A stretch of 64,000 bases of DNA from Vicugna vicugna. Its lineage: Eukaryota. The first letter of the stretch is position 1, and each line of letters begins with the position of its first letter. The position numbers and the translations under genes are program-made. The notes below the pieces were generated by a model, which saw nothing but the letters and a program-made list of their open reading frames with translations, made no database searches and was not told where the DNA came from. The DNA lies in contig MU057560.1 of NCBI GenBank assembly GCA_013265495.1, positions 3,160,909 through 3,224,908 on the forward strand, given 5' to 3'. Positions 14,321-51,438 of this stretch are shown piece after piece.

Positions 14321-15007
14321 ACCCTTAGTTTAATATTTTCAAAATCGTCTAGAAACGTAGAAGTACTGGAGACGGTCTTCTTATCCACTTTGTCAGGCGC
14401 AGAAGACGCTTCCTGCTCAGACGCATGTCTTTCCCGTGCATCTCAGACCTTCTCAGCGTACCGCGCCTTTATTAATGTCGGGAAAGGAGGACTGAGGGTG
14501 AACGGATTCACGCCGAGAAACAGCTGCTCACCTGCTCCCTGTCCGGCGCGGGGAGCGGGGACTAAGAAATCCGACCACGCGGATGCTCCGGAGGGGGCGC
14601 CGTGCAGACGCCCAGCGTTGAAGTTTGCTGTGTCGTCGAGTCCAGGGTTTTGTTCTTACAGCGTTCGGCTAATAAGTAGCACTGCCACGCTGGGGGTCCC
14701 GCTTTACCAGGAGATCACACACACGCGGTCCTCTCACAGGGTGATGTCGCAGAGAAGCGCCAGTTATCGTGCAGCGATAAGCTCCCCCTCCCCCCGGCCC
14801 CTGCGACTGGAGGTCGGCCCGCCTGGCGCTGGGGCTCCTGAAATCTGGGACCTGAGCCTTCACAGGGGGGTCAGCCGGGGAGGACAACTCGCTCCCGCAC
14901 GCCGGTCGGGGCTGGTGATGGCCGCAGACGCGCGTGGGCTCTCACGTCCCTGCAGCGCCACAAAGCGCCCGGCCGAGGGGCTCCTTGCTCTACTGCCGGA
15001 TGCTCAT

Positions 15008-32666: not shown

Positions 32667-32798
32667 TTTTTTTTAACATTTTATTTTATTTCTTGTTAGG
32701 GGGAGATTAGGTTATTCATTTACTGGAGGCACTGGGGATTGAACCTAGGACCTTGTGCACGCTAAGCACACGCTCCACCACCGAGCTACACCCTCCCC
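32667..32798 (-). mobile_element. tRNA-Ala-derived SINE (camelid-type, with tail)
   Basis: Reverse strand reads GGGGAGGGTGTAGCTCGGTGGTGGAGCGTGTGCTTAGCGTGCACAAGGTCCTAGGTTCAATCCCCAGTGCCTCCA plus an A-rich tail; best-preserved copy. Confidence 0.9.
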
Positions 32799-39890: not shown

Positions 39891-40557
39891 AGAAAGGTCA
39901 CGACACTGAGGGGGCTGCATACAGATTGTTAGGTTTCCCGAAGCCGTCAGGTTTTGTCTGTGGTTCTGACGTTCAGACTCACAGAAAGTTCACTGACGAA
40001 CTTATAGGCCAGGCATCCACATTATATGCAGCCGATTTTGGGAAAATGGTGCAGGTGGGAATTGGAAAGTAAATTGCAAACTGTAGTGCGCAGCATTAAA
40101 TTTCTATTAGGGCCCAACAAGATTGGACTGTTCGGCTCTTCTGATAAAACTTGGAAGAGCTGAGGGGAAACAGCTTTTTAAGTTCCGTTCTTTGCCCATT
40201 AAATCAGAATGAGGAGAGGGCGCCCTTCTGTCTTGTTTGCTGTCCGGACTCTTCAGCCGTATAACTGGTGCTCTAAGACAGCCAAGCTCCGGCACCCCCA
40301 CCTCAAGCCAGCTGGCCCTGTAAGCACGAGGACATCCCAGTGTCCTGATGGTTGTTCGAGCTGAAGGACGAGCACGGTGGGTTAGTTTAGGACTTTAAGA
40401 AAAGCCAGCGGGCCCCGCAGACCCCTTCCTGCCTTGGGGTTGGAGGAGGGCACCACGGCCGTGCCTGCTCTGGCCTCGGCCGAACAGCGGAGCTGGTCTT
40501 CGCTGCTCTTACAGGAGGGCCGGTCAGCACCTCCCAGGCCCTCCAGGGCATGCTTTC

Positions 40558-47583: not shown

Positions 47584-47622
47584 CTGGTCACCAGGAGAAC
47601 AGCACGCATTCACCATTCTCAC
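47584..47622 (-). CDS. SNTG2: SNTG2 exon 11 equivalent (39 nt, intact): VRMVNACCSPGDQ
   Basis: Acceptor cccctctctctgcag|GTG, donor CAG|gtagga; 8/13 identical to recalled human MKMANKCCSPSDQ; expected size and position. Confidence 0.88.
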
Positions 47623-49148: not shown

Positions 49149-49276
49149 GTCCTGCAGCGTCCGGTGGCTGATGTTTGCTGACACGGCCCTGAGCCAGTCA
49201 GCGCCGTCCTGGGCTGTGTGAAACTGCAGGAGCCCGTGCTGCCCTGTCTGGGGCCAGCACCTTGAATGCGCCGGAC
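49149..49276 (-). pseudogene. SNTG2: SNTG2 exon 10 equivalent (128 nt) with 2-nt deletion frameshift
   Basis: Acceptor ctcttcccgcag|G, donor GAC|gtgagt. The 5' part reads SGAFKVLAPD in one frame and the 3' part reads GLLQFHTAQDGADWLRAVSANISHRTLQD in another. Confidence 0.9.
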
Positions 49277-49845
49277 CTGCGGGAAGAGCGGAGACGCTGG
49301 AGGGGGCCCCTCGGATCCAGAGGGGGCGACCGGAGGGGGCGGAGGTGACCCCGTCCGCAGTCACCAGGGCAAACCCAGCGCTCAGCCAGCCCGTGTCAGG
49401 ACCTCGGGTAGGTCTGCTGAAAGCGAGCTCAAGGCCCTGACATCCGCCACCAAGAGCCAGTCCTATTTACTAAACACGTGGAAGGCAATTCGGACAGGAA
49501 GTGCGCCCTGCTCTCGCGGGAATGGTGGCGTGCCTGTCTGACGGGGTCCTGAGCCCAGCTTTTTGAAGACCGTTCATCGTGGTGTTTGAAGCTCCTGACA
49601 CAGGGAGACGGCGCAGGTCAAGCAGCACCGCCACTCAGCGTGAGGCGCGCCTGTGACCACGCACGCACTTCTGATTTACAAAAGGGCTTTCGAAGAAGTT
49701 GGTTCTCCTTTATTTTCACCATAAAAACCTCCTTCCCCAAACCTACCGTGACAGTTCTCGTAACAGCAACATAACTGTAACTAACTCAGTAGTTCTTTCC
49801 TACCCTGCACAGCCTTTCTTTCCAAGGGGATGTACACACATCTAC

Positions 49846-50195
49846 TGTCACAGGCTGACGTGTGTCCCCCCAGGATCTGTATGTGGAAGCCCAGACCCCA
49901 GGGCGGCGTCTCTGCAGACGGGCCTCCAAGGAGAGAAGCCTGAGCGAGATCGGACGGGGGGCCCTGACCCGACAGGACTGCTGTCCCTGTGAGATGCGGC
50001 CCCGAGCTGGTCTCCACCCGAGGACGAGCTGCAGAGCCGGCCACTGGGCAGTCAGGAGGAGAGTCCTCACCAGGCACTGAACCCCCCGGAGCTTTGATCC
50101 TGCACATCCCGCCTCCAGAACTCTGAGAACATACGTTTCTGTTGTTTAAGCCCCAGCCTATGGTACTTTGTTACTGCAGCCTGAACTAACGTAAT
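49846..50195 (+). mobile_element. MLT1 (MaLR) solo LTR
   Basis: tgtcacaggctga..gtgtcccccc.. start and cctccagaactctgaga..tttctgttgtttaagcc..tggtactttgttactgcagcc end. Confidence 0.85.
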
Positions 50196-51317
50196 TATTA
50201 CAATAAAGGAGTGTCATTCATACCGCTGTTCCTTTTTTAAAGAAACCATGTATCTAATCCATGCAGTTTGCATTCATGTCCTTAAGGAGACAATTGAAAG
50301 GTTAAAAAAATAACAAAACAAAACAAACCTTTTTTTTTAAAAAAAAACAAGGTTTGCACTAAATTACACTTTAATAATCTTTCAGACATGGGTTTAATCA
50401 TGGTTTCATTAAACAGACAGAAGGATGTGACGGAAGGGAAGGAACCGGAGACGACATAAAACAGCCCTGCACATTCAGGGCCGAAGCCGCCAGAGCAGGG
50501 TCCCTGACCGCACAGCCCTGTCTTTCCGTGAGCACACATCCCGGCCAGGTGTCAGTCCCGCCTTGGGGAGGCTGCCTGGGTCAGAACACAGGGGCCTTTA
50601 CAGCCACGTGCGTCCCCGTCTCCACGTCCTGCTCCAGAGCCCTGGCTCAGAGATCCCACCTGGGGGTCGGGGGGCCGGGGAAACAGGGCATAAAGTCTAC
50701 AGCTCCTGCCCTCCTTCCAAAGGAACTCACTCCGTTTCCAACAGAACTTGGAGCAGTCCAAGGTCGTGGGCCCAGAACAACGGATGTTTTGGTAAAAGAC
50801 CACCGAAGGAGCGTCCCGGGGTGGACACAGGCTGAGCTGTCGGCCGGCTCGCTCTCAGGAGAAACCCCGGGAGCGATGCAGCCAGAAGGGGCCCCCTGGG
50901 CTCGGCTCAGAGCTCGGACGCTGGCCCAGGAGCCGGGGCTGGTCTGGCCTTCTCACCGCAGGGTTTCAGTGACGTCTCTGCAGGTTGGACAGCAATGCCT
51001 CTTATTTCCAGTCTAGTTCTGTTCACATTTAGAACTGAAAACAGCATTTCTCCTTCTAGTGACTGACCCTTCGCGGAGGCCCGACGGACACCTTTCCACA
51101 GTCAGAACCACTCCCGGCGGCAAACCAGCTCTCCTCTGACCACGGACTTCTCCCGGTGCTTACCTCGTGTTGCCGTCATCACTGACTGTTGCTGCTTTTG
51201 CACACGCGGAACCCGCCTGGACGGAGGGCCTGCACTTTGGGGAGGCCAAGGGGGCGTCACCGGCTGGTGAGGCTGCAGGGTTTCTCAGCGACTCCATGTC
51301 GGACGAGGGACACACAC

Positions 51318-51438
51318 CTCAGCCCTTCTGCCCCCGCTCTGCACCGCGAGATCCGGACGGGGGCAGCGACAGGGCGTCCAGCCAGCGCTTCTCGTACTTT
51401 GGTTCATCACCTGCGAGCGAGGGAGGTGAGGACGGGGC
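51318..51438 (-). pseudogene. SNTG2: SNTG2 exon 9 equivalent (121 nt) with 7-nt deletion frameshift and premature TGA at 51321-51319
   Basis: Acceptor tcttgcacag|GCC, donor GAG|gtgtgt. The first 28 codons read APSSPPSLAGDEPKYEKRWLDALSLPPS. The homologous tail RISRCRAGAEGL(R) lies in a different frame. Confidence 0.9.

What the first reader, a model, noticed from the sequence alone, without database searches (positions are those of the whole stretch)
49149..51438. Frameshifts in exons 9 and 10 compensate each other (-7 and -2 = -9 nt), with one TGA between them
Seen: if exon 9 is spliced to exon 10, the shifted frame reads ..PPS-GSRGAERGQKG-TGA-GPAHSRCWPQTGQH- and then rejoins the native frame at GLLQFHTAQDGADWLRAVSANI. 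A single stop, 1 nt before the donor, is all that blocks a full-length frame. A weak internal donor (CGCG|gtgcag near 51345) has the right phase to bypass it. Inference: chance (about one in three for two indels), or a compensated intermediate that stayed translatable until the TGA arose or was bypassed.
Basis: partly seen in the sequence, partly recalled or inferred. Interest (0 to 1): 0.7.

Follow-up and report, generated by a model that had tools for sequence, protein, structure and literature searches.

The report
Chance frame-restoring deletions in dead SNTG2
Two neighbouring exons of a decaying gamma-2-syntrophin (SNTG2) gene carry deletions that add up to nine bases, but this is ordinary pseudogene decay: the stop codon between them is older than the deletions, and the newest deletion is still only one allele among close relatives.

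Summary
On the minus strand, exon 9 (51438-51318) joined to exon 10 (49276-49149) of SNTG2 reads ...PPSGSRGAERGQKG-TGA-GPAHSRCWPQTGQH and then returns to the native frame at GLLQFHTAQDGADWLRAVSANI. An in-phase GT lies 27 nt upstream of the normal donor.

Reads from other animals give the order of events:
- The "-2" in exon 10 is two separate 1-nt losses in G runs. A close relative (organism C) shares them. A more distant relative, about 94% identical in intron 9, lacks them, and its RNA splices exons 9-10-11 normally.
- The 7-nt deletion in exon 9 is the youngest event. It is absent from the organism C contig and heterozygous in an organism D animal.
- The TGA comes from Leu CTG plus AG of the split Arg codon. 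CTGAG is present in the undeleted allele and in the distant relative, so the stop predates the deletion.

The gene was therefore already frameshifted when the -7 arose, and no open frame existed with normal splicing. Exons 12 and 15 also have dead donors. Compensation by chance has odds of about 1/2, and one stop in 26 codons is about what chance gives (0.6 expected). The scan also flagged this gene as lost (s1-213987). Interest is low.

The parts
51318..51438 (-). SNTG2 exon 9 (121 nt; 128 nt in the undeleted allele and in outgroups)
   Evidence: tblastn of Bos, Orcinus and Equus gamma-2-syntrophin; alignment to outgroup exon 9 DNA; acceptor cacag|GCCCCG and donor CTGAG|gtgtgt read
51353..51354 (-). 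Site of the 7-nt deletion. It is flanked by a CCG microhomology and removes the Met/Val-Ala codons plus one base of ..PLSMARISR..
   Evidence: Outgroups have 7 more bases here. The organism C contig has CGGGCCA put in behind 51353. The organism D sample has both a 124-nt and a 117-nt contig across 51267-51383. Allele rebuilt.
51319..51321 (-). TGA in the shifted frame. It is made of bases 2-3 of Leu CTG plus the A of the split Arg codon AG|G.
   Evidence: The same CTGAG is in the undeleted allele (none of X18's 19 differences lies at 51318-51322) and in the relative's spliced contig (loose end).
51316..51317 (-). Canonical exon 9 donor GT (GAG|GTGTGT)
   Evidence: It is used in the relative's RNA: the spliced and unspliced unitigs both begin 28 nt inside exon 9.
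51343..51344 (-). Internal GT (GCG|GTGCAG), 27 nt upstream of the donor and in phase. It lies at the place of an annotated alternative donor in other mammals.
   Evidence: P0055 (Choloepus X2) and P0105 (Pan paniscus X2) lack exactly the 9 residues YKAGTEKLR. Amniote DNA has AG|GTAYAA at this place.
49149..49276 (-). SNTG2 exon 10 (128 nt; 130 nt in the relative and in outgroups)
   Evidence: The spliced RNA contig of the relative joins it to exon 11 with GT..AG ends.
49241..49242 (-). First 1-nt deletion (one G lost from a G run)
   Evidence: alignment gap. The relative has one letter put in behind 49241, and organism C has none.
49232..49233 (-). Second 1-nt deletion (one G lost from GGGG). 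The native frame resumes after it.
   Evidence: alignment gap. The relative has one letter put in behind 49232, and organism C has none.
49198..49200 (-). TGA met in exon 10 when exon 9 is undeleted. This is the state of organism C, where the frame is shifted by the two 1-nt losses.
   Evidence: Translations (..FKVLAPDRAARAPAVSHSPGRR*)
47584..47622 (-). SNTG2 exon 11 (39 nt, open; 5 of 13 residues differ from the vertebrate consensus MKMANKCCSPCDQ)
40556..40557 (-). Exon 12 donor GT>GA
15006..15007 (-). Exon 15 donor GT>AT, next to a 9-nt loss (..GFTCFPK instead of ..GFTCFDSKTK)

Best explanation
The locus is the 3' half (exons 8-17) of the gamma-2-syntrophin gene SNTG2 on the minus strand. 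In this lineage it is a decaying unitary pseudogene.

The order of events is as follows:
1. CTGAG at the end of exon 9 is ancestral, so TGA has always been present in the frame later opened by the deletion.
2. After the split from a more distant relative, two single G losses in exon 10 shifted the frame and created a premature stop in exon 10.
3. Much later, a 7-nt microhomology deletion arose in exon 9 on one haplotype. It is still segregating.

The 7-nt deletion happens to bring the frame back after exon 10's second deletion. With normal splicing, however, it only moves the premature stop forward to the last codon of exon 9. The compensation is arithmetic coincidence in a gene that was already broken.

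The sequence states and their distribution among samples are shown by tool results. That the losses are neutral decay is inferred.
For: - Gene identity: the last exon retrieves gamma-2-syntrophins. tblastn maps exons 8-17 in order.
- The -7 is derived: two outgroup exon 9 sequences aligned here and three further exon 9 stretches from metagenome contigs all encode the full ..PLSMAR.. or ..PLLMAR... Organism C's 29-kb contig carries the 7 letters.
- The -7 is polymorphic: the organism D sample has a two-allele bubble, 124 nt at depth 4.7 and 117 nt at depth 6.2, with linked SNPs at 51297 and 51329.
- Exon 10: organism C shows no indel at 49232 or 49241. The relative's RNA has one extra letter at each place, and its exon 10 then reads an open native frame.
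- TGA is ancestral: CTGAG is unchanged in organism C, whose 19 differences are all listed and none lies at 51318-51322. It is also present in the relative's spliced contig.
- Other lesions: the exon 12 donor is GA, the exon 15 donor is AT, and exon 15 has lost 9 nt.
- Relaxed constraint: 17 changes at 153 columns invariant in 17 other mammals, against 0-10 (median 4) for the other lineages. Identity to horse is 72%, against 78-91% for the others.
- Chance: 0.6 stops are expected in the 26 out-of-frame codons. A frameshifting indel is of the compensating class with probability about 1/2.
- TOGA counts compensating frameshifts as harmless only if no stop lies in the new frame (10.1101/2022.09.08.507143). 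That condition fails here.
Against: - No RNA from this species was available for this gene, so use of the internal donor is untested.
- That donor is homologous to one annotated in sloth and bonobo, and with it the -7 allele gives an open exon 9-10 frame.
- The relative still transcribes and splices the gene, so the locus is not silent in the family.
- Exons 1-7 lie outside the window.
- Whether the exon 12 and exon 15 lesions are shared with relatives is unknown.
- The frequency of the -7 allele in the window's own species is unknown. The one organism A run that was laid gave no contig over the exons.
- Organism names are coded, so 'close' and 'distant' rest only on divergence: 0.44% for organism C and about 6% for the RNA relative.
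Confidence: 0.88

Rival explanations
1. Frame-restoring allele. The 7-nt deletion is a partial rescue. Together with the internal donor 27 nt upstream, it yields an open exon 9-10 frame and a translatable, shortened SNTG2 in carriers.
For: - The internal GT is in phase, and the join is open.
- Sloth and bonobo have annotated isoforms lacking exactly these 9 residues.
- Amniote DNA has AG|GTAYAA at that place.
- The -7 is the last event and arose on a background already shifted by -2.
Against: - The site here is GCG|GTGCAG. It matches the consensus CAG|GTAAGT only at -1, +1 and +2 (plus a purine at +3). The normal donor matches at -2, -1, +1, +2, +5 and +6.
- The only junction observed, in the relative's RNA, uses the normal donor.
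- Twenty native residues (VARISR of exon 9 and the first 14 residues of exon 10, which in orthologs hold the conserved AFEVLALDG), predicted strands before the DWLRAVSANI helix, would be replaced by 17 out-of-frame residues.
- The exon 12 and 15 donors are dead.
- A compensating class is expected half the time by chance.
Confidence: 0.05
2. Assembly or sequencing artefact. The indels are errors of the assembly, for example in homopolymer runs.
For: Both 1-nt losses lie in G runs, which is a typical error site.
Against: - An independent contig of another species label has the same exon 10 letters.
- A 117-nt contig from a third label is identical to the window across the 7-nt deletion.
Confidence: 0.01
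3. Recoding. The TGA is read through, or read as selenocysteine, so the compensated frame is translated with normal splicing.
For: None beyond there being a single TGA.
Against: - No Rfam element was found in the window apart from a tRNA-like hit.
- The TGA is a by-product of a Leu-Arg codon pair and is present long before the frame was opened.
- The stop lies one base before an exon junction with eight exons downstream. From general knowledge, this position should trigger nonsense-mediated decay.
Confidence: 0.01

Closest known systems
Lineage-specific unitary pseudogenes of conserved mammalian genes, as catalogued by gene-loss screens such as TOGA
   Same: The locus is orthologous with exon order kept. 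It has several independent inactivating mutations (frameshifts and splice-site losses), an excess of changes at otherwise invariant residues, and the lesions are confirmed in independent reads.
   Different: One lesion is not fixed: it is absent from one close relative and heterozygous in another. A more distant relative still has an open, spliced exon 9-10-11. I found no paper that names SNTG2 loss in camelids.
Compensating frameshifts as defined in TOGA (10.1101/2022.09.08.507143, section 'Gene-inactivating mutations')
   Same: Three deletions (-7, -1, -1) sum to -9 and the native frame resumes.
   Different: TOGA's rule requires that no stop codon lies in the new frame. Here a TGA lies in it, so the events count as inactivating.
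Alternative 5' splice site of SNTG2 exon 9 (the 530-residue isoforms annotated in Choloepus didactylus and Pan paniscus)
   Same: The GT is at the homologous place, 27 nt upstream of the donor and in phase. It removes the 9 codons that hold the TGA.
   Different: The flank here is GCG|GTGCAG instead of AG|GTAYAA. Its use in this species is untested. The isoforms in other species are automatic annotations, and I inferred the donor from the protein alone.

Membership tests
SNTG2 (gamma-2-syntrophin) orthologue | Exons similar to gamma-2-syntrophin, in the same order and on the same strand | tested here: met
   The last exon retrieves proteins that their sources name gamma-2-syntrophin. tblastn maps exons 8-17 collinearly. 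Exon 16 hits Pfam Syntrophin_4th below the cutoff, as expected for a 37-residue piece.
SNTG2 (gamma-2-syntrophin) orthologue | Orthologous chromosomal position (synteny), and not the paralogue SNTG1 | not tested
   No neighbouring genes lie in the window. The best matches are all SNTG2, and introns align to other mammals' SNTG2 introns.
Unitary pseudogene | Inactivating mutations that are real and not assembly errors | tested here: met
   Independent contigs of two other species labels reproduce the exon 10 state and the 7-nt deletion allele. The exon 12 and 15 donor changes were read in the window only.
Unitary pseudogene | Relaxed constraint on the coding sequence | tested here: inconclusive
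   There are 17 private changes at 153 invariant columns against 0-10 in 17 other lineages. No dN/dS test was possible without codon alignments of close outgroups.
Unitary pseudogene | No intact copy elsewhere in the genome | not testable with these tools
   Only this window of the genome can be read.
Harmless compensated frameshifts (TOGA rule) | Indel lengths sum to a multiple of three | tested here: met
   -7, -1 and -1 sum to -9
Harmless compensated frameshifts (TOGA rule) | No stop codon in the intermediate frame | tested here: not met
   TGA at 51321-51319; the rule is quoted
Programmed stop-codon read-through or selenocysteine | A recoding signal and conservation of the stop in the translated frame | tested here: not met
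   No Rfam family reached its threshold apart from a tRNA-like hit. In relatives, the TGA lies out of the translated frame.

The most novel reading that the evidence does not exclude
The 7-nt deletion is a segregating frame-restoring allele. Combined with the old alternative donor 27 nt upstream, and possibly with the exon 11-to-16 splice seen in a relative, it would let carriers translate a shortened gamma-2-syntrophin from a gene that was already frameshifted. That would be a natural partial resurrection of a pseudogene caught while still polymorphic.
Probability: 0.04. Interest if true: 0.6.

Novelty: new member of a known kind. Interest (0 to 1): 0.2.

Why it matters
The finding itself is ordinary pseudogene decay, and its most interesting reading is refuted: no translatable intermediate existed.

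Two things are still useful:
- It is a worked example of why compensating frameshifts must be checked for stops in the intermediate frame, and dated, before being called harmless.
- SNTG2, a brain and testis scaffold protein conserved from fish to mammals, appears to be lost in one camelid lineage. One lesion is still polymorphic, and a relative still splices the gene. I found no paper reporting this.

Tried and rejected
- PDB sequence search and Pfam on the short exon pieces gave nothing useful.
- The look-up of encoding contigs for the Orcinus orthologue returned no DNA because the gene spans 200 kb. Close artiodactyl codon data could therefore not be had.
- A protein search with the window's own exon 9 ORF, meant to fish out other camelid contigs, found nothing.
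- The metagenome scan for the conserved exon 9 core returned three stretches that are, by their protein sequence, not mammalian. All three have TTA AGG, which gives TAA in the shifted frame.
- One Logan contig, most like mammalian SNTG2 by its protein, has CTC AGG and so no stop. The stop is therefore not universal among vertebrates, and the question had to be settled within the camelid group.
- No RNA run of the window's own species covered this gene. The listed ones are targeted or PCR libraries.
- The AlphaFold model of horse SNTG2 is of low confidence (mean pLDDT 49.6). I use it only for secondary structure around exons 9-10.
- I first placed the exon 9 acceptor at 51411.

Full report
**What is there.** The window carries the 3' half of a gene on the minus strand.
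- Its last exon, searched against 1.8 billion representative proteins, retrieved a 540-residue protein. The sources name that protein and its relatives gamma-2-syntrophin, SNTG2.
- tblastn of the Bos, Orcinus and Equus proteins maps exons 8 to 17 in order along the minus strand.
- Exon 9 is 51438-51318 and exon 10 is 49276-49149.
- Joined, the two exons read APSSPPSLAGDEPKYEKRWLDALSLPPS, then GSRGAERGQKG, TGA, GPAHSRCWPQTGQH, and then the native GLLQFHTAQDGADWLRAVSANISHRTLQD.
- The TGA is at 51321-51319, one base before the donor.
- The literal observation is therefore correct.

**The indels.**
- Aligned to exon 9 DNA from two Logan contigs of other vertebrates, the window lacks 7 bases between ..CCGTCC and GGATCTC... 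These bases are the Met-Ala codons plus one base of the conserved ..PLSMARISR...
- Aligned to exon 10 DNA from two other contigs, the window lacks one base in each of two G runs 9 nt apart, not two adjacent bases.
- There are thus three frameshifting events: -7, -1 and -1.

**Order of events, from reads of other animals.**
- *Organism C.* A 29-kb contig, 0.44% different from the window over 4.3 kb, has seven letters put in behind 51353. It has no indel at 49232 or 49241. That animal therefore has an unshifted exon 9 (..PPSVARISRCRAGAEGLR). It has the same doubly deleted exon 10, which then runs into a TGA at 49200-49198.
- *Organism D.* Two contigs span 51267-51383. One is 124 nt (depth 4.7, seven gap letters, C at 51297 and 51329). 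The other is 117 nt (depth 6.2, identical to the window). Both are flanked by a contig of depth 11.6. This is the bubble of a heterozygote, so the 7-nt deletion is a segregating allele.
- *The RNA relative.* An RNA run holds a 224-nt contig that joins the end of exon 9, exon 10 and exon 11 with GT..AG ends. Its intron 9 is about 94% identical to the window (59 substitutions and 11 gap letters in 960 nt). It has one extra letter behind 49241 and one behind 49232. With the differences that were listed, its exon 10 reads RSGAFKVLAPDGGSTGLLQCHTAQDGADWLRAVSANISHRTLQD, open and in the native frame.
- *Conclusion.* The two exon 10 losses arose after the split from this relative and before the window's species and organism C separated. 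The exon 9 deletion came last.
- *Caveat.* Species names are coded. That the relative belongs to the other camelid tribe is my inference from the divergence.

**The stop codon.**
- TGA in the shifted frame is made of bases 2-3 of the Leu codon CTG and the first base of the split Arg codon AG|G.
- All 19 differences of the organism C contig are listed, and none falls at 51318-51322. The undeleted allele therefore has the same CTGAG.
- The 26 loose letters upstream of exon 10 in the relative's spliced contig end in ..GGAAGAGCTG, followed by AG. CTGAG is therefore present there too.
- The TGA is older than the 7-nt deletion.
- Outside the group the codon varies. It is CTC in one contig that looks mammalian by its protein, which gives no stop. 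It is TTA in four non-mammalian contigs, which gives TAA.

**Chance.**
- Given a frame already shifted by two, a new frameshifting indel is of the compensating class about half the time.
- The 26 out-of-frame codons (69% G+C) are expected to hold 0.6 stops. Of the shuffles, 53% give none and 35% give exactly one.
- Nothing here exceeds chance.
- The TOGA gene-loss method treats compensating frameshifts as harmless only if the new frame has no stop (10.1101/2022.09.08.507143). By that rule these events are inactivating.

**The bypass donor.**
- The GT at 51344-51343 removes 27 nt, is in phase, and gives an open join ..PPSGSR-GPAHSRCWPQTGQH-GLLQF...
- The site has precedent. Two of 104 SNTG2 proteins examined (Choloepus isoform X2 and Pan paniscus isoform X2) lack exactly the nine residues YKAGTEKLR.
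- Amniote DNA has AG|GTAYAA at that place.
- In the window the site is GCG|GTGCAG, which is much poorer than the normal GAG|GTGTGT.
- In the relative's RNA, the spliced and the unspliced contigs both begin 28 nt inside exon 9. This is where a 31-mer graph branches at the normal donor, because intron 9 and exon 10 both begin with GT. The normal donor is therefore the one used there.
- The bypass product would replace 20 native residues (VARISR of exon 9 plus the first 14 residues of exon 10, which in orthologs hold the almost invariant AFEVLALDG) with 17 unrelated ones.
- A low-confidence model of the horse protein (mean pLDDT 49.6) places two strands there (227-234 and 238-248), before a strand at 254-258 and the helix 262-289.

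**The rest of the gene.**
- The exon 12 donor is GA instead of GT (40557-40556).
- The exon 15 donor is AT (15007-15006), and exon 15 has lost 9 nt.
- Exon 11 differs at 5 of 13 conserved residues.
- Over 358 aligned positions the window differs at 17 of 153 columns invariant in 17 other mammals. The other lineages show 0-10, with a median of 4. Identity to horse is 72%, against 78-91% for the others.
- This fits relaxed constraint. It is not a formal test.

**Verdict.** SNTG2 in this lineage is a decaying unitary pseudogene. The 'compensation' is the coincidence of a young, still polymorphic 7-nt deletion with two older 1-nt deletions, across a stop that was always there. I found no paper on SNTG2 loss in camelids. 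The scan's own notes on this window (and s1-213987) already list the lesions.

Noticed in passing
window 47584 joined to 11431 (relative's RNA contig, record 1): The relative's transcript joins exon 11 directly to exon 16. The 26 loose letters match window 11430-11405 exactly. The join skips exons 12-15 (480 nt here, in frame), the block that carries the two dead donors in the window. It is either an isoform lacking the second PH domain, or a sign that those donor lesions are older than the exon 9 and 10 deletions.
   Followed up: partly
window 50385-51345 (intron 9, minus strand): In the relative's RNA run, the first ~960 nt of intron 9 are covered at depth 16.2, about the same as the spliced contig (16.9). 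Intron 10 has depth 0. This suggests read-through or retention of the start of intron 9, or internal priming at the A/T run near 50300-50356.
   Followed up: no
window 51297-51416: Six of the 19 substitutions between the window and the organism C contig lie in these 120 nt (exon 9 and its donor flank, 9.9 CpG per 100 nt). Most are CpG transitions. The deletion haplotype also carries a Pro-to-Leu change at 51416, at a residue invariant in other mammals.
   Followed up: partly
window 32724-32795, minus strand: A tRNA-Ala(AGC)-like sequence (Rfam tRNA 40.5 bits; ARAGORN) inside an SNTG2 intron. It could be a tRNA gene, a pseudogene or a tRNA-derived repeat.
   Followed up: no
window about 50108-50154: A dispersed repeat in intron 9. 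Many unrelated contigs from every DNA run lie on these ~45 nt at under 90% likeness, with loose ends on both sides.
   Followed up: no
Its use is untested.
   Followed up: partly
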